This document shows positions 22,333 to 64,000 of a stretch of 64,000 nt of DNA, piece by piece. Origin of the DNA: Heteronotia binoei (lineage: Eukaryota); the NCBI RefSeq assembly GCF_032191835.1, contig NC_083227.1:41230001-41294000 (forward strand), written 5' to 3'. Below the pieces are notes generated by a model. The model saw nothing but the letters and a program-made list of their open reading frames with translations, did no database searches and was not told the origin of the DNA. The stretch's first letter is position 1. Each line of letters begins with the position of its first letter. Position numbers and translations under genes: made by a program.

Positions 22333-23472
22333 AACAAATCCAACAAAAGCAAAAGACTTGTACATACTGTGGTAGAATTCAGTACATTCTGATAATCAGA
22401 TAGGAAGACAACCAGACAACAAGCTTAAAGATTTATCTGCCAGGCAAATGGTGATCACAGAAACAAGCAATTACACCCCCCTTCAAAGGTGGGCCTTGCT
22501 CCCTGCTTCAAAGGTGGCCAACATATTTACTGGGTTTTGTCACAGTTTCAGACATGTACACAAAATCTTAAAAGTAGAGCTTGGAGAAATACATTTTTTT
22601 CTTTGCTGCTCACAGCTCTCTGTACTACTAACCACAGTTCTCAAAAACTAAGTTTAGTCATCTGTACTTGTAGGCAACTTCCTCAGCAACGGCACTTCTG
22701 CTGCTTTCCAGCTGCTGAGCTCTGTAAAAGCCTTTTTGAAAGCTTTGCACACACAAAAACTGAAAACACCCAAATTACTCAAATACAGCTTCAGTCAGGC
22801 CCAACTAGATTATTTCTTCCGCAATAGCAGGGGAAGGTTCTGCACTCTGGTAGCAACTTTGACATGGCTTCTAAAGCACTTTCCTCCTCCAAGTCATGCC
22901 CAGTCTCCTGGACATGCATCAAGGCTAAATATCAGTGCCCTGTCAGTGTTGAGTTCCTTTAAGAACTAAACTGCTGAGTCAAGGTTATGCAACTAAAACT
23001 ATACAGCTGTGATAGAAGTCACGAGAAGCACAGGTGTGGCCCATGTTACCAATCAGGCTTAGGATTGGGTGGCTGCACTATATCTGTGGTAGCATTAGCC
23101 ACAGCACTTTGCCTTGGTTACATGCCGTGCCTTGGCCTTGGGCGATGCTGTATGAATAACATATGTGAAGGAGAAACTCTGTTGAACTGTTTCTTGGAAG
23201 GAGTGACTTACTGACTGACTTGCTGGATTCATGTAATGTATTGGACTGATTTTTGACTTCTCTATTGGACTGTGATTTGGTGCTGCATATTGGAGGACTG
23301 CTATTCTGTGTATGACCATTGCCTGTTTTGACTGCCTCTTCCGTTTGACCCAAAATATATCTGTTAACTGGCTGTTGTGGAGTCTGTGCTTTTACCACAG
23401 TGTTCTGGAGTGCACCCAACTATCTACTCACTCAGGGGACCACACCTTCCTGCGCATTCAAACTCTGTCATC

Positions 23473-23486
23473 GGTTATGGGCCCAG
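23473..23486 (+). other. Primer-binding site complementary to the internal (anticodon-arm) part of initiator tRNA-Met
   Basis: GGTTATGGGCCCAG is the reverse complement of CTGGGCCCATAACC in tRNA-iMet; 2 nt after the 5' LTR. Confidence 0.9.
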
Positions 23487-23609
23487 TGCGTAGGTCTCCT
23501 GGAGAGTAAGAGCGCTACGTGCCATCAGTTCCTGTGGTCTACTCGAGGTCTACTCGTGAGTAACAGCCATTTTTGGGCGTGGCAGTTTTTTGTTTTTTAC
23601 ACAGGCAGA

Positions 23610-26600: not shown

Positions 26601-27509
26601 ACTGAAAAGATGATGAAATCTATTGTTGAAACTTTGAATGAACAGTTTACTGTGAGGGATCTGGGCAACATCAGACAATATGTTGGCTTAGACATTGAAC
26701 CTGTAAATGGTGGGTATCGTGTCTCACAGAAGGGTAAAATAGCTCAGTTGCTAAAGAGCTATAAAATGGACCAATGCAGGGGAGTGCAATCTCCTATGCT
26801 GCAGAACTTTGACTTAAATGATAGCAATAGTCCACTGTTTGACCAAAGCATCTATCAGTCTTTGATTGGAAGTTTATCTTATATAGCTAACTGGTCAAGA
26901 CCTGATATAGCTATGGCAACTAACCAATTGGCAAGGGCTGTAAAGGAGCCAAGACAATGCCATTGGATTGCTGCTAAACATGTCCTTAGATACCTAAAGC
27001 ATACTCTAGAGTTAAGCTTGTACATAACACCTCTTAAGGATCTAAAGGTGCATGCTTACGCAGATGCAAGCTTTGCTAGTGATCAGAGCACCCGGCAGTC
27101 AACCACCGGTCTGGCAATTTTCATGGGTGGTGTCCTGGTAGGGTGGAGATCTCTGAAACAACGACATGTGGCTCTCTCGACATGCGAGTCAGAGTATTCC
27201 GCACTCAGTACAGTCTGTAGTGAGTTAACCTGGTACAAACAGCTACTAGCTGACCTTGGTTTGTTTTACATAGAACCTATCACTGTGTTTGAGGACAATC
27301 AGGCGGCTCTAAAGCTAGCAACCAATCTTGGAGTTAAATCAAGTTCCAAGCACACAGACGTCAGGTTCCACAATGTAAAGCAATGCTTAACAGACAGGCT
27401 AATCACTTTGGAATACTGTGCCACGAGTGACAATATTGCAGACATTTTCACAAAGGCTCAGACACCAGTAAAACATAAAGACAACTGTATAAAACTTGGT
27501 CTGAAGTGA
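23610..27509 (+). CDS. Copia Gag-Pol polyprotein (Gag, CCHC knuckle, protease, integrase, RT, RNase H), 1299 aa from the first ATG
   Basis: LNGENYCTW (Gag), CFICNSPNHLKRSC, IDSGATVHI (protease), WHRRLGH..C..C and MDLIGP/SDNGTEF/ERRN (integrase), KARLVAQG/HLDVKTAYL/SLYGLKQS/FVDD (RT), YADAS/EDNQAA/DIFTK (RNase H). Integrase before RT is the Copia order. Confidence 0.96.
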   Translation: MESSIQVSGFLIKRLNGENYCTWSEKVTMILKYHGLWEYVTSPPNIAVLDAADDAAVIEKHRSNEDKACALIGLMLEDSQLIHIKSSSSAKSCWDALKSLYVSESVGSHIYLMKKLLSAKYVPGGEMNVHLEFMQRTLQQLQEKEVVFSEQQKAYIILCSLDASYDQFVSCLDILPKAEITMSNIAQRLLNEDMRRRNTVLFGVSPAHSAKSPAREEFKGADSHAAAGKTYSVRRCFICNSPNHLKRSCKRFKRKQSSVPPVGGRHVNLVVNYSSFCNQFLIDSGATVHIIKDKSLFNTYTPIKGQCVMLADGLCANVEGTGLVNIPCLRRKFQMLHVPSIKYNMLSVSTLTEQSFKVSFTAESCLISGDGVSVVAKRRDNLYFLEKENLVQHVSMNRPPHDECIHMWHRRLGHITFQAVKRTLQAAGITPRACHCFVDCEICKATKSKAAPTVSPSKFQSAEILDLVFMDLIGPFPTRSVGGAKFALHIEDHYSRYGFCYLLKSKAETYQNISNWLRFVNRKTGRVPRAIISDNGTEFCNDRMSSLFRRYGISHQRTSPYRPQHNAFVERRNATLYNMCISMLRDSNLPMSYWGESIMSASHVLNYSWSSAIGKIPAEVWYGRKVSISHIKIFGIPAYVNIPKQLQRKGSNKAVKLLFLGYSNNHQSYRFSQVGDKKITTSCSAKFLETSVGWERTSSTVSLPTAVDTDSQLPTGGERRSPSPSSRAIKPEPVTPASSGAGVSQQQQQQPVSQHGVSDEEPEPVLRRSTRTTRPPDRYSPGQACVVLAEPSCYDSIKHLTQDEQAGWNAAMKAELESLKELQVYEESVLPPNHKLLGCRWVYKLKSGADGNVCYKARLVAQGYLQSMQDYDETFAPTLKATSIFCALTYAARHNCVVKHLDVKTAYLHAPLEHTLYMKLPPGVSGGNNNVNVCWKLKKSLYGLKQSGHQWNQFLTECLKKLGFKQGIADPCIFLKGKGEQQCLILVFVDDLALICRTEKMMKSIVETLNEQFTVRDLGNIRQYVGLDIEPVNGGYRVSQKGKIAQLLKSYKMDQCRGVQSPMLQNFDLNDSNSPLFDQSIYQSLIGSLSYIANWSRPDIAMATNQLARAVKEPRQCHWIAAKHVLRYLKHTLELSLYITPLKDLKVHAYADASFASDQSTRQSTTGLAIFMGGVLVGWRSLKQRHVALSTCESEYSALSTVCSELTWYKQLLADLGLFYIEPITVFEDNQAALKLATNLGVKSSSKHTDVRFHNVKQCLTDRLITLEYCATSDNIADIFTKAQTPVKHKDNCIKLGLK

Positions 27510-28459
27510 AGTTGCAATATTACTGCCATGTTGTTGATATGTATGTGAACTATGAATGTAAATAGTTGATGTTACCTGTATAGAATGTTTTTAGTTCCAT
27601 AAGGGGAGGATGTCAGTGTTGAGTTCCTTTAAGAACTAAACTGCTGAGTCAAGGTTATGCAACTAAAACTATACAGCTGTGATAGAAGTCACGAGAAGCA
27701 CAGGTGTGGCCCATGTTACCAATCAGGCTTAGGATTGGGTGGCTGCACTATATCTGTGGTAGCATTAGCCACAGCACTTTGCCTTGGTTACATGCCGTGC
27801 CTTGGCCTTGGGCGATGCTGTATGAATAACATATGTGAAGGAGAAACTCTGTTGAACTGTTTCTTGGAAGGAGTGACTTACTGACTGACTTGCTGGATTC
27901 ATGTAATGTATTGGACTGATTTTTGACTTCTCTATTGGACTGTGATTTGGTGCTGCATATTGGAGGACTGCTATTCTGTGTATGACCATTGCCTGTTTTG
28001 ACTGCCTCTTCCGTTTGACCCAAAATATATCTGTTAACTGGCTGTTGTGGAGTCTGTGCTTTTACCACAGTGTTCTGGAGTGCACCCAACTATCTACTCA
28101 CTCAGGGGACCACACCTTCCTGCGCATTCAAACTCTGTCATGCCCCAACAGGCATTTGTCTGTGGTTCAATTGTTCAGAATGCTCAGCTGTTAACTGGAA
28201 GGATTGTCACATTTACCACTGTCAGGGGCAGGATTAGGTCCACCACTTCAGTCCACAGCCCTGACAACAGTATGGTCTGTCCAAGAATGCAAAGTCTAAA
28301 ACACAGTCCAAGGTCAGGCAAAAAGTTCCCACTTAATACCAGGCAGTACAGTCAAGGATGAATATAATAAGCAAAGGCCAGCTCCACTCCAAAGTCAGGC
28401 AACAGATATACTTCCAGAGCAAGCTCCATCACAAACATGCAAACACATCAATTCCCAAG

Positions 28460-42251: not shown

Positions 42252-44149
42252 TCAGGGGCTCATTTCTCTCTTGACCCCCAGCGATGGCCACAGTCCTGCT
42301 ATGACATTGGTCTGCACAGCTTTCCCAACCAGTTTGGCTTCAATAGCCTTAATGTCATTGCAATGCTGCACCAACTGGGCCTCGGTATTCTGGGAAGTGA
42401 ACTCCAAATCCGAGATCCGGTGCTGAACATCATCATTGCTGCCGGAGAAGTTCCTCAGGGCATTCTGGATGTCAGCCACTGTGGGGTGCAGTCTGGAGAC
42501 CAGAGATTTAATTTCCGCTGTGTCTGCAGCTACCTGCTGCAGTACTGCCATTAGCTGTGCCACAGTAGGCTCAGCAGCCATTTTGTCTAGAAGGAAAGAG
42601 GAAGGAGCTCTTGGCCAAGGTTCCGCTTCCCTGATGTCTGAGGAGGAAGCTGCCTCTATGGTGGTTCTGTGCTCCTCTGTTGCTGTCTGAAGAGTTTCAT
42701 GGGAATGGGCATTAATATTTACAGAACTGTGTTTCCTCAGGCCCATTTCCTGCTCAGGAAACCTGCTTTCCCATCTTCTGGAGGCCCACCAGTTCCAATT
42801 CAGATGTTTATGTAGCCTCCCTCCTGGGGAGATCCTCCACTGAGTCCCCAAGACAGATCTGACAGGCATATTTCTCCTACTACAAGGTTTTCTTTTTTTG
42901 TCAAACCTTCTCTGTTTTGTCAAAACTGAGAGACTGCCGGAATTTCCCCCAGAATCAGAGCAGGTGGGCTGTGTAGTAGAAGCTAGACTCTGGATGAACT
43001 GTCTCTTATGACTGGGGCCTTCACACAGATCATTTCCTTGGCTGCTTTTCTGACAACTGTTGTGTTCTGAAGATTCCTCTGGATTGGGGCCTGCAGGCTG
43101 GAGCTCTGATGTCAGTTGAGAACGTAAGAGAGGTTGGTCTTCGGTCAGTTCTGGTAAACCATTTTCAGAAAGAACAGATTTCGCTTCTCCTCCTTCTGTC
43201 CCCGGACTACTGATCTCCTCATGGCTACTGATGGTCTCCTGATTCATTGAAGCTTCAGTCCCATTCACACCTTCCTCAGAGTAAGCCTCATTTGGTTCAT
43301 TGACTGAGTAAACGTGTACTGACTCAGGCTTAGAATCTTTCTCAGGACTTTGGAAAATTTCTTCTTCTGATATAAACAATGATCCCTCAGGTAAGGCTGC
43401 ACATTCCAAGTCATCCTGCATAGTGATATTCTGATCATGGAGAAATGTTAAGGATTTATCTTGGTCCCCACTATCAATAGCCATGTGGAAAGTCTCCTGC
43501 CTTGGCCTACTGTCTTGATGGTCCCTCAAGGCTTTTCTAAAAGGAACTGAATTTTCTTCCACTCTAGGGTTGTTTGACTCCACATCCTTCTGGCCCTCCT
43601 TGATTAAAGTTTCCTCTGGATTCTGAGAAGTGAACTCCAAATCTGAGATCTGGTGCTTAACATCATTGGTGCTGCCAGAGAGGTTCCTCAGGGCATTCTG
43701 GATGTCAGCCATTGTGGGGTGCAGCCTGGAGACCGCAGATTTAATTTCCGCTGCATTTGCAGAATTTTCTTCTCGGAGGATTTTCTTCTCTGAGGACTCC
43801 TGCAACTCCCCAGATAATACTGCGGGTTCAGCAACTTCCTCTCTGGGGCTTTTCCTACAAGTAACAATTGCGGATGAGTCTTCTCCTTTTCTACAACCAC
43901 AGCATACACTCACAGTCTCCAGACCTAGTTCATCATCTATGGTTATTTCCTCCAAATCACTGAGGAAAAGAATGGCATCTTCTTTTTCCACTGAACTGCT
44001 CTTTGGCTGCCTTTCCAGATGAGCCTCCCTAATCAAATCTTGCTCAACATCCCAGGAAATCTCCTTGCTGGATTTTTTCAGCAGCTCCACTGTAGGTTCA
44101 GAAGCTTCCTGCCAGGGGTCCTTTCCTGTCTTGCTCCCTGTCCCTGCAT
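42252..44149 (-). CDS. FLYWCH-SCAN-KRAB gene, last coding exon: acidic low-complexity region with two coiled-coil repeats, no C2H2 fingers
   Basis: Acceptor cctctttgcttcaacag (AG at 44151-44150), phase 1, matching the KRAB exon; 1898 nt open to TGA; candidate poly(A) signals ATTAAA (42061-42066) and AATAAA (41591-41596) on the minus strand. Confidence 0.8.
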
Positions 44150-45187
44150 CTGTTGAAGCAAAGAGGTGGAAAGTCAGCTTATTCCCCCAGTAATGCAATA
44201 AAGCCCTTCATTTGCTGATAAGACCATTTAACACTATTTGTTATATGTATCATTGTATATGTATCATCATGAAATGCCTTGGACCCCAGGCAACGGAAAA
44301 TATGTTTATAAGAATAAAAGCACCCATCAGGTTTAGAATGTGTTTCGTTCTATTGGCAATTATACCTTATTTTTGTCATTCTACTATAGGTATGTAGATA
44401 CTCCTGAACTTTATCCTCACAATAAGTTTATGAGGTAGGCTAAACCAAAAGATAAATAGGCCAAAGGTCAACCAATGAGCTCCATGGCTTAGGGAGAGGC
44501 AGGGCTTTTTTTGTAGCAGGAACTCCTTTGCATATTAGACCACACCCCTCTTATGTAGTCAATCCTCCAAGAGCTTATAGGGCTCTTAGTACAGGGCCTG
44601 CTCTAAGCTCTTGGAGGACTGGCTACATCAGGGGTGCGTGGCCTAATATGCAAAGAAGTTCCTGCTACAACAAAAAAGTCTTGGGGAGAGGGATTTTCTT
44701 TCATGGAATTCCAAGTGGTATGCAGAGGGAACCCTGGCAATTTTCCACCCAGGTACAGGCCATAAACAGAGTTACAGTCAGGCCAAGCAACAGTGACTGT
44801 CTTTGTGCCACTCAGAAAACTTCACTGGTAAAACAGAGATTAACACTGACACCTAAGGTGGCCAAATCACTGGAGAAAAATGTCCTGCCCCTTTAGTAGA
44901 GGCTTAATGGGATGTTATTTACCTCTGTCCCAATTTTAAAAAAACTTTTGGTTTTCCATTTCCTCACATTAAACCTCATTATACATACAGGACATCTTTT
45001 CCCCAGGCCTGTTGGCAACCCTATTACCACACCTGCCCATGCACCTATCTTCTGGAGTGGTCATGTTGGTCAGCTTGTTGTTGAAAGGGCTCAATAGGCC
45101 CTGAAAGATAGGGACAGCATTTCTTGTTGTTTGCACAGAACCCTAACCACACAGCAGGATTTTCTAGGAACCAAGAGGGACCCTTAC

Positions 45188-45314
45188 TCAGCCAAGACAC
45201 GTTATTGTAATTCTGATGCATAACATTCCAATACAGTGCTTTTTCTTCCTGGTCCATCAAAGTCCATTCCTCCTCAGAGAAACGCAGAGATACATCTTCG
45301 AAGGTGACCAGGTC
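45188..45314 (-). CDS. KRAB-A box exon (127 nt)
   Basis: tttcag|DLVTFEDVSLRFSEEEWTLMDQEEKALYWNVMHQNYNNVSWL|gtaagg; canonical KRAB-A length and phase 0/1. Confidence 0.92.
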
Positions 45315-47104
45315 CTGAAACAACCAGAAGGAAATTATATTAATCACGTGACCATCTTTTACATAGACTTGGAGACAGGATTGCCAAGTAAATCTCAGAT
45401 CAGTGATGGATCACTTGCAGGGTCTTGGGCAAACCCACTGTCCTTCAGTGTCAGTTTGCAGTCTGAGAAGGGGGTATAATAAAGCCACCTTGCATAGTAC
45501 CCGCTGGGGAGGCAGATTGAAACAGTGGGGGGCCCTTTTTATGCCCAAAGAAGGATGATACTATATATAAAATGCACAAATTTTAAAAGAGAGAAATCTA
45601 CAAACACCTCCAAACTATTAATTCTACTGCCATCTAGACATTAATACTAGACAATACTACTAGACATTATATCCCACTGCTATTAGCAACACAGAAGAGC
45701 TCATTCCCACAAGACCGGATGATGACCACTAACTCAGATAGCTTTAAGAAGTGATTGGACAGATGTTTGGAGACTTCTCAAAAAATACCTCTGTTAAGTT
45801 CCACGCTGGCAGAAAGGTAGGATAGAAAAGTGAATACATGTTATATTAAAGGTGTGGAAGTAACAGCAACTGAACAGCCTTCTGACTAATGATACAAGCA
45901 GACCACTGATAGGCAAGTTAGCATAACTAATGCCATTTTCTTGTTATTCTGTTACTCAAGTTATTCTGTATTGCTTTAAAAAGCAAGTAACAGGGCCCAT
46001 ACCTCCAATTTTGTCAGATCTCAGATGCTAAACAGAGTTGAATCTGGCTATTACTTGGATGGGAAACCTCCTTGAAATGCCAGGAGACAGGGGCAGGCCT
46101 TATTCAGCCACCTGCTTGAATATCCTCCAGGCTACTAGTAGGGGTCAGTCACCAGAGGTCGCCATGACTTCCAGGTGCACATGCGGTCCCACACAAAAAA
46201 TTACAAAAAAAAAGAAAAGTTACAGGCAAGTTATTTTCAGCATCTATGCAAAACAGGATGTGGGTAAGATGTTCTGGGGCACATGGGCAAGCAAGACAGT
46301 TGGTGAAAAACAGAAAAGCAATCTTGCAAGATTAAAAAGCAGTATGAATGTTCAAAAGAAGGGCAAAAGACATACATGCTTGGCAAATGTGTGTGCGTGT
46401 GTATAAAAAAACCCCTCTGTAATCTAATCTGTATAGATATATCCTCTGTAATCTAAAGACATCTGCACAGGTCTAAAAGTTGTTTACTATAGTAGATAAA
46501 AAGCAGGTGCTGGATGCTTTTCTAATGGATTTCTTGGGTTTTTGCTGCTGAGATCCCCTTTATGGCAATAAAATTCTGTCTGCTTCTGGAATCTCACTAG
46601 TTATGTTCATCAGTGGGCTTTGGATGCACCAGCTAAGGGCCCATTTGGGCAACACCACAAATAAGAGTGTGGCATCTGTGCACAGAGCAGCCTTGGGAGA
46701 GCACCATACTCAGTGCAAAGAAACATGTTCAGGCAAGCCTCTAGAAGCACCTCTAAGAGATGCGTGACAAACAAGCGAAGCGCTGCCCATTTCCAAAAGC
46801 TTTGTCTGCTTCTCATACAGCTTTCAGAAAGAAAAAACGCTCAGGAGTCTCATTAGGGGAAAAAAAACTGCTACACTTTGGCTGGGCACGTGGTGTCACA
46901 ATCTCTAGTACCTGATTCCCTTTGCATTAAACCTTCTGACATTACGTGCATTTGTAAAGTGTTTCCTAGAAATGTTCTCCTCTCCCCACCCCCCCTTCCA
47001 ATGATCTGAGGCTGCTGTTGCTGGTTAATGACTCTGCATTGCCTGCTTCAACTTCAAAAGCACTCAGGGGCCAGCGCCAACCACTAGTAAGCAGTTCTTG
47101 TTTC

Positions 47105-47400
47105 ACACAGGACATAAGAGAAGCCATGTTGGATCAGGCCAATGGCCCATCCAGTCCAACACTCTGTGTCACACAGTGGCCAAAAAACCCAAGTGTCATC
47201 AGGAGGTCCACCAGTGGGGCCAGGACACTAGAAGCCCTCCCACTGTGTCCCCCCAAGCACCAAGAATACAGAGCATCACTGCCCTAGACAGAGAGTTCCA
47301 ACAATACGGCTGTGGACCTCTGCTCCATATGCTTATCCAATCCCCTCTTGAAGCTGTCTATGCTTGTAGCCACCATCACCTCCTGTGGCAGTGAATTGCA
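47105..47400 (-). mobile_element. CR1-type LINE 3' fragment in an intron
   Basis: cataagagaagccatgttggatcaggccaatggcccatccagtccaac matches the recalled squamate CR1 3' end in reverse. Confidence 0.6.
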
Positions 47401-47469
47401 CAGAATACACAGCAGTTCTGCAGAACCCATTCAACAGGCAGAGCCATTAAACACTCTCAAAACACTTAC

Positions 47470-48345
47470 CTTCTCCAGCTCCTGACCAACCATGACCAGT
47501 TCCTGGTCCCCCAAATAGGTCTCGGCCAGCCAAACTGCCTCCATGCTGGTTCTTGGCTCCCTGGCTTTCACCCAAGCCTGCATGCTCACTGGTAGCACAG
47601 CTAGGAACTGTTCCAAGATGACCATGTCCACAATCTGGTCTTTGTCGTGCTCCCGAGGACACAACCACTGCCGAGCTGCCTCACTTATCCAGGACAGAAT
47701 CTTCTGGGGATTTGCTCCAGGTGGGACAGCGCCCGAGCGAAACCTCTGCCTCCCAGCTTCCTGGCTGGCCTGAAGGTGGACTGAATGGGATGTTTGGGGC
47801 TCCTCACAGAGCACGGGACTGGCCATGGCACCACCATCCTTGAACCTCTCTGAGCATTCCTGCAAGTCTGGAGGAGTTACAAAGACCACTGAGGATGGCT
47901 CTGCAGGAACCGATTCAGCAACTGTGGCAGATGTTTGCGAGTGACACGTCCCTTGCAGAGTTGCACTCAGACATGCTCTCAAGCGCTCCATTGTCTGTTT
48001 GGGGTTTTGGATACATGGCTTCTTGGCAGGAACTGTTTCCGACAGCCCATCAGAAGTTGGCGGGACCCCTTTGTACGTCAGTTGTGGAACAGAAGGGGTT
48101 GTGGTCTTTGTGCTCCGCTCAATTCTCTTGGCTTCTCTGGCTGCCTTGATTGGAGGGTGACAGTGTGCTGAGTACTTTATGACGCGGTCATCATATGTGT
48201 GAGCTCTCCCCGGGCAATGGTCCTTATAGTAGATTGCACATTTCCAAAAGGTTTTGTTCCCAACCACACGCTCCTTTGTATGCAAGTATCCATCATAAAC
48301 CAACTGATCCCGCCCTTTCTTACTCTTCACATACTGTAGGGGCAT
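47470..48345 (-). CDS. First coding exon: N-terminal FLYWCH zinc finger (aa ~5-65) plus SCAN domain (aa ~196-278)
   Basis: KSKKGRDQLVYDGYLH...TFWKC...HCPGRAHT...HCHPP (FLYWCH); RQRFR...ARQWLCP...EQFLAVLP..MQAWVK...EAVWLAETY (SCAN); donor AAG|GTAAGT at 47469 in phase 0, matching the KRAB acceptor. Confidence 0.9.
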
Positions 48346-48570
48346 TTTTCAAAAGAATCAGGGTAGGGAACTGGGGATCAAGGTGTGTATATATATATAT
48401 GTATATTTTTTTTAAAATGGGGGGAACAGGTAACTTGCGGTGAGAGAAAAGAATCCAGAGAAGGTGCTGCCACAAAATGGCACTTCAGGATATTCAGGGA
48501 GCCAGGAAGAGATCCTTAAACATCATACAAGAGGAAAGAGGCTCAAGTTTCCCCTTCATGGTCCTCTCAC

Positions 48571-49030
48571 CCACGTTATGTCTGCAAACATTTTTTCCTC
48601 GAGTTCTATTTCCAGGGTCCGCCCAACCCGATTAGGCAGCACCTGCCTTTGGAAAGCCTTTCCGATCCCTCCAAGCCCAAACCGATGTCGGGTTTATTCT
48701 TTTCCTTGTTAAATGCTAGACCTGTCTTCCCCCTCCCCCGCCAGACGTCACTTGGCAGAGGACTCCGGCAATCAAACGGTTAAAAGAATACCCTGAATCT
48801 GGCGACGGCAGGTGGATTCAGGAAGTCAGAATCTGCAAGGCAGTTCTCACTCCAGTCGGATCGCAGTGAAAATGGCTGCGATGAAGTCAATCCGGTTCTT
48901 AGGGCAGCCGCTACCCAGCCCCGCCTCCTTGTTGCACAAATCAGAAGACTACAGAGGAGCCGGCACGCCAGCAGATCCGGTCTCCATTGTAATTTCTTTT
49001 AGCAAGACGCCTTAGGCGACAGAGGAAACA
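48571..49030. promoter_or_regulatory. CpG-rich promoter and probable non-coding first exon of the FLYWCH-SCAN-KRAB gene
   Basis: CpG cluster, CRE-like gacgtca (~48744-48750), YY1-like aaaatggctgc (48869-48879); minus-strand donor GG|GTGAGA at 48570 and acceptor cccag at 48372-48371. Confidence 0.6.
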
Positions 49031-51036
49031 GCTGAGTCTTCCGGTGCATGAAGCCCTCTAGAGGGAGCATTAAGACAACCAATCTGCTTCCAGTGGAAAA
49101 TGAAACTAACCTGAATAATCAGAACAAAGTTTAAAGGCACCTTTAAGACCAACGAACTTTTATTCAACATGTAAGCTTTCCTGTGCACGCGCAGTTCTTC
49201 AGATACAGTGAAATCGAAATTACCAGTCCACACATATAGGTAGAGGCAGAGCAGAAAATTAGCATACAACATAATAAAGATGTTTAGCAAGGACCAGGTA
49301 GTACATTTACTGGACCAGGTAGTCCAGTAGCACCTTTAAGACCAACAAAATTTAATCAGAATGTAAGCTTTCCTATGCATGCATGCTTCAGCAGACAATG
49401 GAATGGAGTACAGTGAGCAGAGGACCAAACAGGAATAACAACTGTAGTTTATATGATTACCATTTGTTTGGGTTTAATTCTAGGGGAAAACATAGTAAAG
49501 GAAATAAATATGTCAAAATTGGAGATTGATGGGCTGATGTATCCTTAATTGTGGAATGCTGAGAGTAATTAACAGAGACCGTGCCATTACACTCCATCCA
49601 TCCTCTCTCAAGCATGGAGGCAACCTTATAGTATGTTCCTTGAAGCAGGGTGATTGGCTGTGTAGAGTTATCACCTTTGTCCTCAGACCAGAGAAATACA
49701 CTCCAATCTAACATTCCAAATTTCATTATATTGCATTACAACCTACCATTCTAATCTATTATGTCCCTTTTGCAGGAGTAGTGAGAATACAGATGTCAGG
49801 GCTGAATGAGGTTAACATATGTAGTGAGAGAAGAAACTCAGCTTATCCTCTAATATTGTATATGTCATTAAATGCCAACAGTACCCTTCGGTTCTTTACA
49901 GAGGTCAAACAGGTCAAACTGAATGCCAAAGGATAAATGAACACAAATCTGACATCAAGAATCACAAGACTGAGAAATTTGTAGGAGTACACTTAAACCT
50001 TCCAGGACATTCTATAGGTGACCTCAGAGTAGCTGTTCTATTGCAAAGGAACTTGAGGAACAGACTAGAAAGGGAAATTACTGAGCTGCAAATTGTTACA
50101 ACAATGGAATCCCCAGAACTTAACAGGGATATTGGTTTTTATCTCACTATATATGCTAACATAATTCAGTCAATACATCTATATTCTCATGAATCTCCAA
50201 GAAGGGCCATACATCCTCTTCGTTTTATTTCTTATTTGGAATAGTAGGTTAGAATTGTGATGTAAATAGTAATAATGTAACATAAATAGTAGAATGTAAT
50301 GTAATTTGGAATGGTAGATTGGTCTGAATCCAGTCTGAATAGAAGTGAGGGGAAGGGGTAAGGCAAAGGTCAGAGATGAGAGAAAGCATTCAGCAAAGTA
50401 CTTTGGGTTTGCGCATGGCAAAAAAAGGCACTGGATGAGTGTCTGTGGCCTTGCAGAAGGTGAACAATGTTTTGGGTGGCTGGATAATGCCATGGAGACA
50501 GCAGGAAGCAAAAAGTCAGCAAAAGGCAATTAAAGTGGAGCTTGGATCTTTGGTTATGGTGTTGAGAAGCATCACAGTTCCTCTAGTCATTCAAGATTGT
50601 TTTAATAGTTTATAGTGTCAAGCATGGCTAATTCTGATCAATAACCGATGGGTTTGTGGCTTGTCAAAAGCAGGCCTAGGTAAGATCCTAGAGAACCAAA
50701 TGCTACTAGTTTATTATCTTTTCCTGGCTCCTCTTTGTTTTATGACTGTTAATTAGAGGGAACAAAGCAATCAGCACCTTCCCATGAATCCTTCCGCGGG
50801 AGGGAGAGCCATCTGGGCGGTGCAAGGCCGAATGCCTGATAACGCCCTGGGAACGTATGTAGTTTTGATACTCTATGTGTGAACGCTCCCCTGCTTCCCC
50901 TCCCGTAGGAATCCCTTTGAAGTATCTTAAAACCTGTGTATCGATGTATTGGTTTCATTCTTCTCAAGCCACGGCTTGAGCCATTTTGAGAAGAATCCTT
51001 TTTGAAGCTTAACCACCCTGGCTACTTTGTAACCGA

Positions 51037-54000
51037 ATGGCTGAAAAGATTCCAGGAGGCGGTGAGCTTCCCGATCCTGAAGATGAGGCGCCCGTACCAT
51101 GGCATGTACTGGACGCCCGGAGAGCAGCAGGCTCACCTCTCCAGATCCAACAGCTCCTGGCCACACCCCAGGAGTGGCAGCCGCGGACCTCCACCACCAC
51201 AATGGACGAGGCACCGGTGCAGAGAGAAGCCATCCTAACCCAACACATGTGCCGGGTAAAGATGGCCAACGAAGGGGCTGGCAACCCGGGACTGATGGAG
51301 CCGGAGATCGATACCATCATGGTCGTTCCCCTGCCAGACAGAGATCCCGATCTGAGGGAGAGGGATCCGGAGGCCCCGGCCCTGAAGGAAGAGGAAGATG
51401 AGGTGGCCCATGAGTTCCGTGTGATGGTCCACAAAGAGGTGGAGGCCGTGGCCAAGGGACTGCAGGATGAGATGCAGGCGATGACCACTCGGATGGCGGG
51501 AGAGATCACCAGAGAGATCACCTGATCTCTGGGACTGCCCAGACCCCAGAGGGTTCAACCACCCCCTCTGGCCCGGCAGCTGGCAGCCCCGGGGGCACTG
51601 GCTGCTCCACCACCTGCGGGGCCGGCACCTAGATCAGCAGCACCCCCGGCGCCAAGGGAAGGGGGCCATGGGTGGGAGCTGGATGCCATGGGGACCTGGA
51701 GGAAGTGGAATACTTTACGATCCAGGCTAACAGCTACATGCATTACTGGGGGAACACGTTCCCCGATGAATTTAGTCGAGTGGACTATTTGGGGTCGAAA
51801 CTGAAGGGGGCCGCCAAGAGATGGTACGTGAGCCTGTACGAAGCTGTGAGCCCGGAACTGGACTATGTTGCTACGTTCCTCCAGGCTCTGATGGCCCAAT
51901 ATGAAGACCCCCTCCAAGAGACCCAGGCGTTAGCGGCCTTGCGTGACATGCAGCAAGGATCAAAGTCGATTAGAGAGTACGCTGTGGAGTTTCGGGCAAC
52001 GCCGTGAAGGTGAGAGGGTGGAGTGAGTTGATGAAGATCGAGCACTTCATCAGAGGGCTGAATGCGGGCATACTGGATCGGGCCCTTACTCAGGCCAGAC
52101 CTACCACGCTGGTGGGATGGATCCAATTGGCAGGTGAGGTCGAGACCAACATGAAATGAGTGGCCATGCAACGCCAGCAGCAGAGCGGTAAGGGAAGCCG
52201 AGATCCAAAGACGGGGGCCAAGCCGGAGGTGAAGAAAGCCCAAGGAGGCGGTGGTGGGAAGGCTGCAGGGTCCCGAAAGTGTTTTCGATGTGGGGACCCC
52301 AACCATCTGGCCAGCAATTGCCAGATTTCGATGTGGGCACCCCCGAGTGCACCCAAGCCGGGCACCCCAGTGCCAAAAAAAAACACTGGGCCGCTTTAAG
52401 GAAGCGGCAAAAGGCAGCGCTGCAACCACAGGGGAGCCGGAGGACGAAACTCTCATCGCGGACGAGCTGAGTGAGCTGGTGTGGATGGACAAGCTGTCAG
52501 GAAACGAGGACAACCTGCTCTAAAGGGTGCCAACCAGCAGGTCGCAGAGGAACCGGCACCACTCAGGGTGAGAGTAATGGGGTTGCTGTATTTTGTACCA
52601 GTGAAACTGCTGAACAGTAAGCTCAAAAGATTTGTGCAGGTGAGAGCCCTGATTGATTCAGGATGCAATCGGGACTTAATCACCCACAAGTTGGTGGACG
52701 CCTTGGGGTTGGCCACCACGGCCCTACCCTTTCCCATACAATTCGAACAGATGGACGGGACAGTGATGCGGGGAGAGCCCTGCGTGCTGGAGACTCAGTT
52801 GGTGCCCGTGGGGATCGAAGGGCATTGGGACCAAGAGACGTTTGTAATCGCTCCCTCCTGCTCTTATGATGTAGTCCTGGGAGTGGGGTGGTTGGCTAAA
52901 CAGGAACCAAGCATCCGGTGGGGGGGGGATCAAACCATAAAGTTTGTTGACTCGCTGTGTGAGACCCATCTTTGGAGTCTGGATTGGGGCCCATAGCCCC
53001 CTCCCATGAAGGAGAAGGTCTGTTTGACAATGCAGGAGGTCCCAGCCGTTCCTAAGGCATATCGGAACGATGGGGTGTTTAGTGAGCAGGGAGCGGACAA
53101 ACTTCCCCCTCACAGGAGCACCGACTGTGCTATCGAACTAATAACAGGGCAGTCGCTGCCTAAAGCTAAGCTGTACTCTATGGGGTGGGCAGAGAAAGTG
53201 GAGCTACAAAAATTTCTAGACCGGAACTTGAAACGGGGTTTTATCAGACTGGCGACGGCCCCCCACGCCATCCCAGTTTTATTTAGGAAAAAGAAGGACA
53301 GCTCGCTTAGGCTTTGTATGGACTTTCGTGGGATTAACGGGATTTCAACCTCCAATGCCTATCCCATCCCCCTCATCAAAGACTTATTGAGCACGGTGTT
53401 CGAAGGTAAGATTTTCACCAAACTGGGCTTGAGGGATGCGTACTTTAGAGTGCACATAAAGGAGGGGGATGAATGGAAGACGGCTTTTAATACTCCCATG
53501 GGACAATTTGAGTATTTAGTGATGCCGTTTGGACTACAGGGCGCGCCAGGGGTGTTCATGAATTTTATCAATGATGTGTTACGAAAATTTTTGTTCAATG
53601 GGGTAGTGGTTGACATCATTATTTATTCACAGGATGAATAGTCCCATGTAAAATTGGTGAGGGAAGTATTGAGCACCTTATTGGAGCATAAGTTATACGC
53701 CAAACTGTCCAAGTGCGAGTTCCATAAGACCGAGCTAGATTACCTGGGGTTTCAGGTGTCCGCACAGGGACTGGCTATGGACCTGGCCAAGGTACAAGCC
53801 GTATTGGATTGGGCCCCCCCGAGGACATGTAGACAGCTACAATCTTTCCTCGGGTTCGCAAATTTCTACAGAAACTTCATTGCGTGGTTCGCCCAGATTA
53901 TGCTCCCCCTCACAGAGTTGTTAAAAACGAAGGGGCCTGAGGCAAAGCGCCGGGGGCCCATCTAAATTGGACACCGAAATGCCAAGAGGTGTTCGACAAA

Positions 54001-55920
54001 CTCAAACGGCTGTTTACTAGCGAGCCGGTCCTGAGCCACCCCAATGAGTTGCGGCCCTTCATTGTGCCATGCAATGCCTCCGACGTGGCCGTAGGAGCCA
54101 TTCTCATGCAGAAAGATGAGAAAGGGAGGCTGAGACCCTGCGCATATATTTCCAGAAAGTTCTCGGCCAAACAAAGGAACTGGTCGGTGTGGGATAAAGA
54201 GGCGTTTGCTGTAATTTATGCTTTGAAAACCTGGCAGTCATGGTTAGAGGGGGCCAAAATCCCTTTTGAGATATGGACGGACCATAAGAACCTCGAGGCT
54301 CTCACTGGGAGGAGGAAACTGAGAGAAAAACAGATCAGGTGGGTGGGGTTTTTCTCCAAGTTTGACTTTGTGCTGAAGCATATTCCCGGAACCAAGAATT
54401 TCTTGGCTGACGCACTCTCTCGCTTGTCTTAGCACAACAGTCAGAGGGAGGAGGTAGTAGATTCCCTAGTCTCTCCCTCCCAAGTAGCTGCTGTAGTGAC
54501 AACCCGGTCCCAGACCAAATGTAAGCTGGAGGGGTGGGGGACCAAAAGGATGGCTTTGGAGACAGAAAAGGAAGGGGACGACCGGCCAGGGGAAATTCAG
54601 AAGAAAGAGGATGGGTTGTGGTATAGGGGGGAGAAGCTGTACGTCCCCAAAAATATGAGAGCGGAAGTCCTACAATTTTGCCACTCAAACAAACTGGCCG
54701 GGCATTTTGGGTACATGAAGATGCTCCATCTAATTAGTAGGCAGTTCTGGTGGCCCTCCCTAAAGAAAGATGTATCCGAGTTTGTATCCTCCTGCCCCAT
54801 ATGCATAATGGCGAAAAGGAGGGGGGGGACCACCTGGACTGCTAAAACCACTAGAGACAGCTACCAGACCCTGGTCGGTAGTCTCAATGGACTTTATTGT
54901 GGAACTACCGCCATCACATGGCAAGACAGTAATTCTGGTGGTAGTAGACACATTTTCAAAACAAGCCCATTTCATTCCTTGTGCACAATTACCCACGGCT
55001 AAAAAGCTAGCCTATTTGTTTTTTAACCATGTTGTTAAACTCCACTCATTCCCGGACAAGGTAATTAGCGACTGGGGCCTGCAGTTCATTGCTAACTTCT
55101 GGCGGGAGTTTTGTAAATTGTTAGGGATGGAGCAAGGCTTGAGTTTTGCCTACCACCCTCAAACTGACGGACACACGGAACGCGTAAATGCCTTACTAGA
55201 GCAATACCTGCAGTGCTACATAAACCACCAACAATCAAATTGGGTGGATCTCCTCCCCTTTGCTGAATACAGTTACAACAGTGTGCACAGCTCCACCAAA
55301 ACCTCCCCCTTCCAAACCGTTAATGGGTACGAAGGAAAACCAATCCCAACGCTGCCAGGGGGAGTGCAATCAAAGGAGCCCAGCTCATTCAAACAGTGGT
55401 GGAGAAACCTGAGTGAGGGTTGGAAAGGGATTCAAGAGAATTTGGAGTCTGCAAAAGGTGTACAAAAAACAGTATGACAAGTCCCATGTGCCCGCCTGGG
55501 ACTTCAAGGTGGGGGATTCGCTGTTCGTTTCAACAAAGAACTTGCCCCTGTAGCAACCCTCCAAAAAATTGGCTTATCGATATTTAGGACCCTTTAAGAT
55601 CAAACGGGTGATCAATAAGGTAACTGTAGAATTGGAACTGCCTAAAATGTTTAGTAAAGTACACCCTGTCTTTCATTGCAGTCTGCTCCGAAGAGACCCC
55701 AGTGCTTCTCTTTGGCACCCTCAACCGACAGCTCCGCAACCTATCCAGATTGGGAATCAGAGTCACCATGAGGTCCAGGAGATTCTGGACTCAAAAGTCT
55801 AACAGGGGACATTGTATTACTTAATCAAATGGAAACACTTTCCTTCTAGTGAAAATGAATGGGTGGCACAAAAAGATGTTTTAGCCCCAGATTGGTCAGT
55901 AAATTTCACAGAAAATTCCC
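51037..55920 (+). pseudogene. Disrupted Gypsy gag-pol: Gag, CCHC, protease, RT, RNase H, integrase, chromodomain
   Basis: YLGSKLKGAAKRWY (Gag), CFRCGDPNHLASNC, ALIDSGC, LRLCMDFRG/EWKTAF/VMPFGL, NASDVAVGA/TDHKNL, GHFG..K/CPIC/MDFIVELP/HPQTDG, HEVQEILDSKV*QGTLYYLIKWKHF..SENEW (55767-55890); many stops and frameshifts; RT motif reads VVVDIIIYS (YLD missing). Confidence 0.93.
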
Positions 55921-62835: not shown

Positions 62836-63139
62836 TCAGTTCATAGCGACCATGGCAGCAAGGACAGACTCCTCTCTGCACTTTTCTGTGTTACTGGGAT
62901 GGCTTTGAGGCTCCATTGCTATTGGGAGACACAGGGTTGGGGGCTCCTGCACCAGCTGGGGAGGCCCAGCGGCTGCTTCAGGGTGGCTCTTGCTCTTGTG
63001 AGCAGTGACATTGTCTTTCTTCTCAAACTTCTTGCCACAGAGGTCGCAGGAAAACTGGTAGAAGGAGTCCGCATCGTGTTTCTTCATGTGCCAGTTCAAA
63101 GAGGCCTTCTGGCGGCAGGTGAACCCACAGATTTCACAC
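62836..63139 (-). CDS. Last coding exon of a ZFP91/ZNF692-family C2H2 zinc-finger gene (upstream exons outside the window)
   Basis: Acceptor ctttacacag (AG at 63141-63140); CEICGFTCRQKASLNWHMKKHDADSFYQFSCDLCGKKFEKKDNVTAHKSKSHPE. Fingers are ZFP91-like but the tail is short as in ZNF692, so the paralogue is unresolved. Confidence 0.85.
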
Positions 63140-64000
63140 CTGTGTAAAGAAGAGGGATGGAGGACAGAATCACACACAAGCATGGCCATGGTAAAGGAGA
63201 CCAATGGTTCATTTGGATCAGTACTGTCTCTCTGTCAGTGTCCAATCAGAGGGCACCCAAAAGTTCCCAAATAAGATGCAACGGCTCTCACTATTTTCTC
63301 CAGTTTGTCTTCAGCATCTCAGGGGATAACCTCCTCTTTGAACATGGAGGGTGTGATTTGAGTTACCTTTCTCCACAGTATATGATCTAACATTTTTAAA
63401 AAGTTTTTTTAAAAAAAAAATTCATGGCAACTGCAACTCCCTGGGATGATTCATCCTATATGTTAGCTGTGGATTTATCTATATCCCACTTTTCAGCCAA
63501 TTGTTTCCCAAAGTGGTTCAAATCACAAAGAGAGGCACCCTCTGCTCAGGAGCTTAAAAAGCCAAGGCAATCAAAGGGGAGAGGTGGGGAAGGAAGGGAA
63601 GGTCTAACTATATGCTGTGCTGTTCTTGGCCTCTCCCCCATACCCAGCCTGCCTATTTCAGTTCACAGGTTGGGATTGGGCCACTTAAGCCTCAACACCC
63701 CACTCTTTTCCCAACCCGAAATGGCCTTGGAGAGCTACTATTTGTCCCACTGAGGAAATTTATGTGTAGCCCATCACTATCCACATACACTAATGCCTCT
63801 TGGAGAACAAAGTGGCTCTCCAGAGCCCTTGCGGGTTGAGAAAACGGGATTGGGGGAAACGCTTAATTCTCTTTCCCCTGCCATGGCACGGTCCCAATCC
63901 AACGAACTCCCATATGCCTGAAAATTAAGTTCTGAGCCCAGAACTTCCAGCAGCACATGTCTCATCAACAGGACTAAGGCAGACCAGGGCGGGGGAGAGG

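What the first reader, a model, noticed from the sequence alone, without database searches (positions are those of the whole stretch)
42252..48345. Intact chimeric gene FLYWCH-SCAN-KRAB with no C2H2 array: a candidate repressor built from transposon-derived parts
Seen: three exons (48345-47470, 45314-45188, 44149-42252) with canonical GT-AG sites and matching phases (0, then 1) join into one 2901-nt ORF (966 aa + stop), below a CpG-rich promoter. Established: FLYWCH occurs in Mutator-type transposases, SCAN derives from a Gypsy capsid domain, and KRAB recruits TRIM28/KAP1 and is normally followed by C2H2 fingers. Inference: an N-terminal FLYWCH finger may replace the zinc-finger array as the DNA-binding module, making this a host-transposase-type fusion. 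I know of no characterised protein with this order, but cannot search.
Basis: partly seen in the sequence, partly recalled or inferred. Interest (0 to 1): 0.88.

Follow-up and report, generated by a model that had tools for sequence, protein, structure and literature searches.

The report
Gecko copy of KMUTD1 fusion gene
This is a real, intact gecko gene that joins a DNA-binding finger captured from a Mutator-type transposon to SCAN and KRAB regulator domains, but it is the orthologue of a fusion gene (KMUTD1) already catalogued in snakes and lizards, so it is conserved and untested rather than new.

Summary
The three exons join exactly as described into a 966-codon ORF. Pfam finds FLYWCH, SCAN and KRAB-A well above threshold and no C2H2 finger. 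The window is from Heteronotia binoei. NCBI already models the gene (LOC132572350, 966 aa), differing by two residues at the exon 2/3 junction.

The architecture is not new. The same gene, with the same three coding exons and the same flanking genes, is annotated in over 20 squamates. Two of them (Pogona LOC110088025, Anolis LOC103277990) are the gene IDs listed for "KMUTD1" in Cosby et al.'s catalogue of host-transposase fusions. That entry reads Mutator FLYWCH plus KRAB and SCAN, Toxicofera, dN/dS 0.126, and it was never tested functionally.

What I add:
- The gene is present in geckos, lacertids, an amphisbaenian and a cordylid, so it probably dates to the squamate ancestor.
- Transposase homology runs about 65 residues past the FLYWCH domain, with no catalytic core.
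- Exon 3 holds two fossil C2H2 fingers (hhalign 97.5%, E 7e-12) with zinc ligands lost in all 20 species. The parent was therefore a SCAN-KRAB zinc-finger gene whose array decayed.
- A conserved C-terminal coiled coil has no detectable relatives.
- All folded modules are under purifying selection.

The likely function, a FLYWCH-targeted KRAB/TRIM28 repressor, is inferred only.

The parts
48551..49050 (.). Short CpG-enriched patch 200-700 bp upstream of the ATG; candidate promoter or 5'UTR
   Evidence: GC 0.52 and CpG o/e 0.68 (22 CpG per 500 bp), against o/e 0.27 for the window and 0.05-0.2 nearby. No transcript evidence.
47470..48345 (-). Coding exon 1 (292 codons): start codon, FLYWCH, transposase-derived linker, variable linker and SCAN, in one uninterrupted exon
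   Evidence: The same single exon of 855-876 nt is found in Paroedura, Eublepharis, Hemicordylus, Pogona and Lacerta.
47956..48345 (-). MULE (Mutator-like) transposase-derived N-terminus, residues 1 to about 130
   Evidence: Aligns colinearly with the N-termini of FLYWCH+MULE transposases P0110, P0134 and P0065 and with beetle and metagenome fragments. A profile of the linker alone hits the same proteins just after their FLYWCH domain. No MULE catalytic domain is present.
48157..48333 (-). FLYWCH zinc finger, residues 5-63
   Evidence: Pfam PF04500, E 1.6e-13. W34, C36, C44, H61 and H63 are invariant in 20 of 20 squamates. omega 0.24, p 4e-15 against omega = 1. AF2 predicts a beta fold with pLDDT 68-87.
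47944..48027 (-). Conserved helix after FLYWCH, residues 107-134 (motif KQTxxRLRACL); it matches the LKxTIQRxR motif of the transposases
   Evidence: Alignments A2, A3 and A6. Predicted helix 115-134, pLDDT 62-67. Translation checked.
47503..47760 (-). SCAN domain, residues 196-281
   Evidence: Pfam PF02023, E 2.3e-24. omega 0.38, p 1e-10. pLDDT up to 89.
45188..45314 (-). Coding exon 2 (127 nt): KRAB A box. There is no KRAB B box.
   Evidence: Pfam PF01352, E 1.5e-16. Exactly 127 nt in six orthologues. 11 of 12 residues needed for KAP1-dependent silencing are kept or conservatively replaced; Glu35 is Gln. NCBI's alternative donor is at 45182.
42252..44149 (-). Coding exon 3 (632 codons plus stop at 42252-42254): long, mostly disordered region, fossil zinc fingers and C-terminal coiled coil
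   Evidence: Homologous exon in all squamates. The middle part has omega about 0.7 and pLDDT below 40. NCBI's alternative acceptor is at 44143.
43613..43762 (-). Heteronotia-specific in-frame 150-nt duplication of part of the C-terminal coiled-coil sequence (source copy 42380-42529)
   Evidence: Direct repeat, 88% identity. Absent from all other orthologues.
42813..42968 (-). Two fossil C2H2 zinc fingers, residues 729-780, with zinc ligands lost
   Evidence: hhalign against a tandem two-finger profile: probability 97.5%, E 6.9e-12, score 55. The best of 100 column shuffles scored 25.5 (mean 9.4, sd 3.3). Exon-3 windows away from the relic score 16 or less. No species of 20 keeps a full ligand set. 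Translation checked.
42324..42590 (-). Conserved C-terminal coiled-coil module, residues 855-943
   Evidence: Best-conserved part of exon 3 (A4). omega 0.32, p 4e-19. Two predicted long helices, 863-900 and 913-943. Only generic coiled-coil matches in Pfam and PDB. No relatives outside this gene.

Best explanation
The locus is the Heteronotia binoei orthologue of KMUTD1, a single-copy squamate gene. It arose when the N-terminal DNA-binding part of a Mutator-like (MULE) transposase, the FLYWCH finger plus about 65 following residues without the catalytic core, became the start of the SCAN-coding exon of a SCAN-KRAB-C2H2 zinc-finger gene. The host's finger array then decayed. Two ligand-less fossil fingers remain in exon 3.

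Shown here: the gene structure, the domains, the transposase homology, orthology and synteny across squamates, the fossil fingers, and purifying selection on each folded module.

Inferred: the protein acts as a sequence-specific transcriptional repressor. FLYWCH would bind DNA, originally the transposon's own ends. SCAN and the C-terminal coiled coil would make it dimerise or oligomerise, possibly with other SCAN proteins. The KRAB A box would recruit TRIM28/KAP1 to silence bound loci. I put identity as KMUTD1 at about 0.95 and the repressor mechanism at about 0.5.
For: - Gene model and domains.
- NCBI protein essentially identical.
- Same FLYWCH-SCAN-KRAB order in geckos, Hemicordylus, Varanus, snakes, iguanians, lacertids and Rhineura.
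- Hits P0172 (Pogona LOC110088025) and P0183 (Anolis LOC103277990) carry the gene IDs listed for KMUTD1 in Cosby et al. Table S3.
- Same three coding exons with a 127-nt KRAB exon in six other species. A gene with the same faint C2H2 Pfam profile lies upstream in five of the six fetched loci, and the window carries a ZNF692-like exon in that position. A Sulfotransfer_2 gene lies downstream in both the window and Paroedura.
- Transposase origin.
- Fossil fingers.
- Selection (ML omega): FLYWCH 0.24, SCAN 0.38, KRAB 0.43, C-terminus 0.32, all significantly below 1.
- FLYWCH zinc ligands invariant, and 11 of 12 KAP1-critical KRAB residues kept: with residue roles from PMC9753469.
- Four other KRAB-transposase fusions repress reporters carrying their cognate transposon ends, wholly or partly through KAP1: Cosby et al..
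Against: - There is no transcript, binding or reporter evidence for this gene in any species; KMUTD1 was not assayed.
- KRAB Glu35, which forms a salt bridge to KAP1 Arg311 and is essential for silencing in ZNF10 scanning, is Gln in all but the lacertids. There is no KRAB B box.
- KRAB domains that accompany SCAN in old mammalian genes are often 'variant' KRABs with KAP1-independent roles (Helleboid et al. 2019, as cited in PMC9753469).
- From my own knowledge, FLYWCH domains can mediate protein-protein contacts, as in Drosophila Mod(mdg4).
- In Sphaerodactylus the FLYWCH part is cut off from SCAN by an in-frame stop. Snakes also have a FLYWCH-less isoform. The rest of the protein may therefore work without FLYWCH.
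- About half of the protein (exon-3 middle) is predicted disordered and only weakly constrained.
Confidence: 0.6

Rival explanations
1. The protein is a KAP1-independent scaffold or modulator. The KRAB is a variant that does not recruit TRIM28. The protein would act mainly through SCAN and the C-terminal coiled coil, for example by heterodimerising with other SCAN zinc-finger proteins and bringing FLYWCH, or nothing, to their complexes.
For: - Glu35 to Gln in the KRAB A box, and no B box.
- SCAN and the coiled coil are as constrained as FLYWCH.
- FLYWCH-less forms exist in Sphaerodactylus and Thamnophis.
- SCAN-linked KRABs are often variant KRABs (literature cited).
Against: - The other 11 KAP1-critical positions are canonical or conservatively replaced and are conserved over 20 species.
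- Even the charge-reversal mutant E35R in ZNF93 only weakened binding 26-fold, to about 200 nM.
- The KRAB exon is under purifying selection.
Confidence: 0.25
2. FLYWCH here is a protein-protein or RNA-binding module rather than a DNA-binding one, so the gene is not a sequence-specific transcription factor.
For: FLYWCH domains have non-DNA partners in some proteins (my own knowledge: Mod(mdg4)-Su(Hw), FLYWCH1-beta-catenin). No binding site is known. No tool result bears on this directly.
Against: - The captured piece is the N-terminus of a transposase, the part that normally recognises the transposon ends.
- In Cosby et al., 76.5% of captured transposon domains are DNA-binding domains, and the fusions tested bound their cognate ends.
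- All zinc ligands are invariant.
Confidence: 0.1
3. The model is an annotation artefact or a decaying pseudogene: a chance ORF stitched across transposon debris.
For: - Exon 3 is largely low-complexity and disordered, with omega about 0.7.
- The locus is surrounded by retrotransposons.
- No RNA evidence was available here.
Against: - The 966-codon ORF is intact, with the same three exons and open frames in at least seven species from lineages that split at or near the base of Squamata.
- omega is significantly below 1 for every module, exon-3 middle included (p 1e-6).
- Cosby et al. report 100% coverage and splice-junction support in 7 RNA samples for KMUTD1.
Confidence: 0.03
4. It is a conventional SCAN-KRAB zinc-finger gene whose C2H2 exons lie further downstream and are spliced in, so the finger-less form is only a minor isoform.
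For: - A snake paralogue (Erythrolamprus P0180) does combine FLYWCH-SCAN-KRAB with a real C2H2 array.
- Cosby et al. list 'parental + fusion' transcripts.
Against: - No C2H2 array lies in the 42 kb downstream within the window.
- All orthologous models end in the same exon 3, at a conserved stop after the coiled coil.
- The finger remnants lie inside exon 3 itself.
- P0180 is only 84% identical to P0174 over the shared part, so it is a paralogue and not an isoform.
Confidence: 0.02

Closest known systems
[quoted passage not shown]
   Same: The same gene: Mutator-derived FLYWCH fused to KRAB and SCAN. Pogona LOC110088025 and Anolis LOC103277990 are direct hits of the window protein. Purifying selection on the transposase part is seen in both studies (their dN/dS 0.126; mine 0.1-0.25 pairwise, 0.24 by ML).
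   Different: The catalogue gives the span as Toxicofera, 170-200 My. I find it also in Gekkota, Lacertoidea, Amphisbaenia and Cordylidae. The catalogue does not mention the transposase linker homology, the fossil zinc fingers or the C-terminal coiled coil. It calls the birth mechanism alternative splicing, whereas FLYWCH and SCAN share one exon in the six species where both could be mapped in a single ORF.
KRABINER and the other KRAB-transposase fusions (KMARD, KTIGD and KHARBID series)
   Same: A KRAB domain joined to a captured transposase DNA-binding domain. Four of these act as sequence-specific repressors, wholly or partly KAP1-dependent.
   Different: They derive from other superfamilies (mariner/Tigger, Harbinger, hAT, P/Kolobok). 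Most are young and keep more of the transposase. None has the SCAN + KRAB + fossil-finger + coiled-coil layout.
PGBD1 (mammals)
   Same: A host-transposase fusion that also combines SCAN and KRAB with a transposase part (Table S3).
   Different: Its transposase part is a piggyBac catalytic domain at the C-terminus, not an N-terminal DNA-binding finger. It is an independent event in Theria.
SCAN-KRAB C2H2 zinc-finger proteins (ZKSCAN type; many in squamates, e.g. P0013, P0185)
   Same: SCAN exon, then a 127-nt KRAB-A exon, then one long last exon. This is the inferred parent architecture.
   Different: There is no working C2H2 finger, only two ligand-less relics. An N-terminal FLYWCH is added and the C-terminus is a coiled coil.
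FLYWCH+MULE transposases (e.g. P0110, P0134, P0065) and the beetle fragments P0085 and P0164
   Same: The N-terminal FLYWCH and the following linker with the LKxTIQRxR motif are colinear, at about 27-34% identity over the aligned N-terminal stretch in A3 (up to 41% in the phmmer stretches).
   Different: No MULE catalytic domain, no sign of multiple copies or terminal repeats in the window, and a fixed syntenic position.
Vertebrate FLYWCH1
   Same: Contains the FLYWCH zinc-finger fold.
   Different: FLYWCH1-type proteins have several FLYWCH repeats, and one such hit (P0102) also carries the FLYWCH_N and FLYWCH_u regions. They lack SCAN and KRAB and do not match the linker profile.

Membership tests
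KMUTD1 / host-transposase fusion gene (Cosby et al.) | A transposase-derived domain and host domains encoded in one ORF | tested here: met
   FLYWCH plus transposase linker, SCAN and KRAB lie in one 966-codon spliced ORF.
KMUTD1 / host-transposase fusion gene (Cosby et al.) | Orthology to the listed genes (Pogona 110088025, Anolis 103277990, Python 103058648, Thamnophis 106544370) | tested here: met
   The Pogona and Anolis LOC numbers appear among the hits with the same three Pfam domains. Exon structure and the upstream neighbour are shared with the Pogona locus L005. The Python and Thamnophis sirtalis entries were not seen by name.
KMUTD1 / host-transposase fusion gene (Cosby et al.) | Purifying selection on the transposase-derived part across more than 50 My | tested here: met
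   FLYWCH omega 0.24, 2dlnL 61.6, p 4e-15 over six species. Pairwise dN/dS 0.09-0.26.
KMUTD1 / host-transposase fusion gene (Cosby et al.) | Transcript support for the fusion junction | not testable with these tools
   No RNA-seq was available. In this gene FLYWCH and SCAN share an exon, so the fusion does not depend on a splice. Cosby et al. report support in 7 samples for other species.
KRAB zinc-finger protein (KZFP) | KRAB A box | tested here: met
   PF01352, E 1.5e-16, 60 bits against a cut-off of 20.4.
KRAB zinc-finger protein (KZFP) | Tandem array of functional C2H2 fingers | tested here: not met
   No C2H2 Pfam hit. Only two relic fingers remain, lacking zinc ligands in all 20 species.
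KRAB zinc-finger protein (KZFP) | KRAB binds TRIM28/KAP1 | not testable with these tools
   By sequence, 11 of 12 critical residues are kept or conservatively replaced, and Glu35 is Gln. The residue mapping assumes that the paper's KRAB logo uses Pfam PF01352 numbering.
SCAN-domain family | SCAN (leucine-rich, capsid-derived dimerisation) domain | tested here: met
   PF02023, E 2.3e-24, 85 bits against a cut-off of 27. Confident helical model. Dimerisation itself was not tested.
MULE / Mutator-like transposase | N-terminal FLYWCH DNA-binding domain with the family's linker | tested here: met
MULE / Mutator-like transposase | MULE (DDE) catalytic domain | tested here: not met
   No PF10551 hit in any exon. 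Homology stops at about residue 130-150, before the DGTFK block of the transposases.
MULE / Mutator-like transposase | Mobile: multiple copies and terminal inverted repeats | tested here: not met
   One copy in the window and in each of six orthologous loci, at a fixed syntenic position. Terminal repeats were not searched for specifically.
FLYWCH1-type host proteins | Several FLYWCH repeats plus FLYWCH_N / FLYWCH_u regions | tested here: not met
   A single FLYWCH domain and no FLYWCH_N or FLYWCH_u hit (compare P0102).

The most novel reading that the evidence does not exclude
KMUTD1 is a squamate-wide case, roughly 200 My old, of complete DNA-binding-domain replacement inside a KRAB zinc-finger gene. 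A captured MULE FLYWCH module took over targeting and the original C2H2 array decayed to two recognisable fossils before the squamate crown. A coiled-coil module with no detectable relatives has been conserved at the C-terminus since then. The protein may still recognise sequences descended from the donor transposon's ends, which would make it a lineage-specific regulator with a traceable origin for its binding sites. Neither the fossil fingers nor the coiled coil appears in the published catalogue entry.
Probability: 0.5. Interest if true: 0.5.

Novelty: already known. Interest (0 to 1): 0.35.

Why it matters
The headline architecture is already catalogued, so the finding is not a discovery. 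The gene is still a useful natural experiment. It shows a KRAB zinc-finger gene swapping its DNA-binding module for a transposase finger, with the old fingers left behind as fossils. It has been kept under selection since about the origin of squamates.

Nobody has tested what it binds or whether its slightly atypical KRAB still recruits TRIM28. Natural FLYWCH-less forms exist (a gecko with a stop in the linker, a snake isoform). A snake paralogue has regained a real finger array. These offer built-in comparisons for asking what the captured domain contributes.

Tried and rejected
- C-terminal coiled coil as a LINE-1 ORF1 coiled coil. I suspected this from memory of an 'AExRISxLED' motif. No Transposase_22 family was listed at E up to 1 among the top 25 families for the 17 orthologues. 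PDB profile hits were only generic coiled coils such as keratin, GCN4 and coronin. There were no other copies in the window or in six orthologous loci. A profile search of 5.8 billion proteins returned only three unnamed Logan fragments (226, 226 and 185 bits), most likely pieces of the same gene. The idea is not supported and the origin remains unknown. The sub-threshold DUF7491 hit matched only the Heteronotia sequence and was dropped.
- Extra C2H2 exons downstream. None were found. The weak tblastn hit at 5399-5845 is a LINE reverse transcriptase.
- Erythrolamprus P0180 as a finger-bearing isoform. It is a paralogue, 84% identical.
- Literature. No paper in the library combines FLYWCH, SCAN and KRAB meaningfully. 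'KMUTD1' occurs in no main text, only in the supplementary table.
- The look-up of encoding contigs failed for the X2 isoforms P0005 and P0006. The X1 isoforms were used instead.
- The first iqtree parsing script failed and was fixed.

Full report
**1. The observation**

Translating the three proposed exons on the minus strand and joining them gives 2901 nt, 966 codons and one terminal stop. The splice sites are canonical GT-AG and the phases are 0 then 1.

Pfam scans of the pieces give these hits:
- FLYWCH, residues 5-63, E 1.6e-13.
- SCAN, residues 196-281, E 2.3e-24; both of these are in exon 1.
- A KRAB A box filling exon 2, E 1.5e-16.
- No C2H2 finger in the 631 in-frame codons of exon 3.

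A regular-expression scan of all six frames, and tblastn with about 200 fetched SCAN/KRAB/C2H2 proteins, find no finger array in the 42 kb downstream of the stop.

The 'CpG-rich promoter' is a single short patch at 48551-49050, with GC 0.52 and CpG o/e 0.68. The window background is 0.27.

**2. What the locus is**

Exon 3 retrieves an NCBI protein, 'uncharacterized protein LOC132572350 [Heteronotia binoei]'. It is 966 aa with the same three Pfam domains, so the window is from Bynoe's gecko.

NCBI moves both the exon-2 donor and the exon-3 acceptor 6 nt downstream. I mapped six orthologous proteins back onto their genomic loci. All combinations stay in frame, and only RNA can decide.

**3. Distribution and prior knowledge**

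A full HMMER scan with exon 1 and a word-indexed search with residues 1-334 give full-length FLYWCH-SCAN-KRAB proteins of 800-1050 aa in these groups:
- Geckos: Paroedura, Eublepharis, with partial models in Gekko and Sphaerodactylus.
- A cordylid: Hemicordylus.
- An amphisbaenian: Rhineura.
- Lacertids: Lacerta, Zootoca, Podarcis.
- Varanus.
- Iguanians: Sceloporus, Pogona, Anolis.
- Many snakes.

Cosby et al. (bioRxiv 10.1101/2020.05.07.082677, Table S3) list exactly this architecture as KMUTD1. The entry reads:
- Transposase type Mutator, domain FLYWCH, best Repbase hit MuDR-5_Lsal.
- Host domains KRAB and SCAN.
- Span Toxicofera, 170-200 My.
- 'Parental + fusion' transcripts.
- dN/dS 0.126.
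- Gene IDs including Pogona 110088025 and Anolis 103277990.

Both of those LOC numbers are among my hits. The gene is thus an orthologue of a catalogued host-transposase fusion. The name occurs in no main text in the library, and KMUTD1 was not among the four fusions assayed.

**4. Orthology**

Six orthologous loci were fetched (L001-L006). All share three coding exons. Five of the six show a gene with the same faint C2H2 Pfam profile upstream. The window carries an exon 85% identical to turtle ZNF692-like at 62938-63141 in the matching position. A Sulfotransfer_2 gene lies downstream in opposite orientation in both Paroedura and the window, at 11522-12640.

Gekkota split from other squamates at or near the base of the crown (my own knowledge). 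The fusion therefore probably predates crown Squamata, which is older and wider than the published 'Toxicofera'. I could not test tuatara.

**5. Transposase origin**

The N-terminal roughly 130 residues align colinearly with the N-termini of proteins that carry FLYWCH followed by a MULE transposase domain (P0110, P0134, P0065). They also align with short FLYWCH proteins from beetles and metagenomes that continue into the start of the MULE domain.

The similarity goes beyond the Pfam domain. A conserved helix (residues about 115-134, motif KQTxxRLRACL) matches the transposases' LKxTIQRxR motif. A profile built only from residues 66-140 of 20 squamates hits those proteins immediately after their FLYWCH domain, with E down to 9e-8. 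One caveat applies: that database was small and had been pre-selected by similarity to exon 1.

No MULE catalytic domain is present. FLYWCH and SCAN lie in one uninterrupted exon in the six species where both could be mapped in one ORF. The captured piece is therefore contiguous with the SCAN exon and is not spliced to it.

**6. The parent gene and the missing fingers**

Residues 729-780 of exon 3 (window 42813-42968) align over all 56 columns of a profile made from 300 genuine tandem two-finger units. hhalign gives probability 97.5%, E 6.9e-12 and score 55.

Controls support this:
- One hundred column shuffles of the same alignment reach at most 25.5 (mean 9.4, sd 3.3).
- Exon-3 windows that do not overlap or adjoin the relic score 16 or less.

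The C-x2-C-x12-H-x3-H spacing of the first finger is preserved. Its second Cys and second His are replaced in all 20 species, and the Cys knuckle of the second finger is deleted. The host was therefore a SCAN-KRAB-C2H2 gene, and its fingers were already dead in the squamate ancestor.

**7. The rest of exon 3**

The last 110 or so residues are the best-conserved part of the exon. They are predicted as two long helices and have omega 0.32. They match only generic coiled coils in Pfam and PDB and have no relatives outside this gene.

Heteronotia alone carries a 150-nt in-frame duplicate of part of this module, at 43613-43762, 88% identical to the source copy. The 500 or so residues in between are predicted disordered (pLDDT below 40) and evolve with omega about 0.7.

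**8. Selection**

ML codon models on 6-7 species give the following values. All are significantly below 1, and Nei-Gojobori pairwise values agree.

| Region | omega |
|---|---|
| FLYWCH | 0.24 |
| Transposase linker | 0.68 |
| Variable linker | 0.66 |
| SCAN | 0.38 |
| KRAB-A | 0.43 |
| Exon-3 middle | 0.72 |
| C-terminus | 0.32 |

FLYWCH residues W34, C36, C44, H61 and H63 are invariant in 20 of 20 species.

**9. Likely mechanism**

By analogy with the KRAB-transposase fusions tested by Cosby et al., the most likely function is a sequence-specific repressor. FLYWCH would bind DNA. SCAN and the coiled coil would provide oligomerisation. KRAB-A would recruit TRIM28.

I mapped the KRAB exon onto ZNF93 numbering through the Pfam coordinates and the rule given in PMC9753469. 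Eleven of the twelve residues required for silencing are kept or conservatively replaced. Glu35, the salt-bridge partner of KAP1 Arg311, is Gln everywhere except in lacertids. There is no B box. Recruitment may therefore be weakened or altered, and this is the main uncertainty.

Natural FLYWCH-less forms show that the remainder may also act alone:
- In Sphaerodactylus the linker has gained 27 nt, has diverged, and contains an in-frame stop.
- A Thamnophis isoform uses an alternative 5' exon.

**10. Verdict**

The gene is real and intact, and its interpretation as a host-transposase fusion is correct. It is already catalogued and widely auto-annotated, so novelty is low. The incremental points are:
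- the wider taxonomic span;
- the extended transposase homology;
- the fossil fingers;
- the orphan coiled coil;
- the lineage-specific variants.

Function remains untested in any species.

Noticed in passing
window 22941-28061 (+): An apparently intact, very young Ty1/Copia-type LTR retrotransposon. It has a single 1369-aa ORF (23400-27509) with gag, integrase and RVT_2 domains. It is flanked by direct repeats that are 100% identical over at least 300 nt (22941-23240 and 27611-27910).
   Followed up: partly
window about 51000-55500 (+): A degraded Ty3/Gypsy-type LTR retrotransposon (aspartyl protease, RT, RNase H, integrase zinc finger and core) split over several ORFs. It lies about 2.7 kb upstream of the gene's start codon and is CpG-richer than its surroundings.
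   Followed up: partly
window 11522-12640 (+): A single-exon 372-aa ORF of the Sulfotransfer_2 family (E 4e-64). The same kind of gene lies downstream of the Paroedura orthologue (L002), which supports synteny. The spacing is about 30 kb here against about 7 kb in Paroedura, presumably because of retrotransposon insertions.
   Followed up: partly
window 62938-63141 (-): An exon 85% identical at protein level to turtle ZNF692-like (SCAN-KRAB-C2H2) proteins, the upstream neighbour gene. A gene with a matching faint C2H2 Pfam profile lies upstream in five of the six other squamate loci.
   Followed up: partly
window 4814-5839 (-): A LINE-type reverse transcriptase fragment (RVT_1) inside a CpG-enriched stretch.
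   Followed up: no
L001 (Sphaerodactylus townsendi) 9461-10000: The FLYWCH coding sequence is present and open just upstream of NCBI's start codon. The linker where the conserved TIQRLR-type motif should lie has gained 27 nt, has diverged, and contains an in-frame TAG. In this assembly FLYWCH is therefore cut off from SCAN-KRAB. This could be a real loss, a tiny new intron, or an assembly error.
   Followed up: partly
P0180 vs P0174 (Erythrolamprus reginae, same chromosome): A snake paralogue has the FLYWCH-SCAN-KRAB front end (84% identical to the orthologue) joined to a genuine array of about 9 C2H2 fingers. This is a secondary re-fusion or duplication that restores a KZFP layout.
   Followed up: partly
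P0184 (Thamnophis elegans isoform X2); P0202 (Rhineura isoform X3): Annotated isoforms exist that lack FLYWCH, through an alternative 5' exon entering exon 1 just after the finger. Others stop after SCAN by read-through into intron 1. The window's own ORF 47431-48345 would give such a 304-aa FLYWCH-SCAN protein if intron 1 were retained.
   Followed up: partly
window 45182-45188 and 44143-44149 (-): Two in-frame donor/acceptor pairs lie 6 nt apart at the exon 2/3 junction. NCBI's model uses the downstream pair, and conservation of a 127-nt exon 2 favours the upstream donor. Other geckos and lizards have a NAGNAG acceptor here, which explains their X1 and X2 isoforms differing by one residue.
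   Followed up: yes
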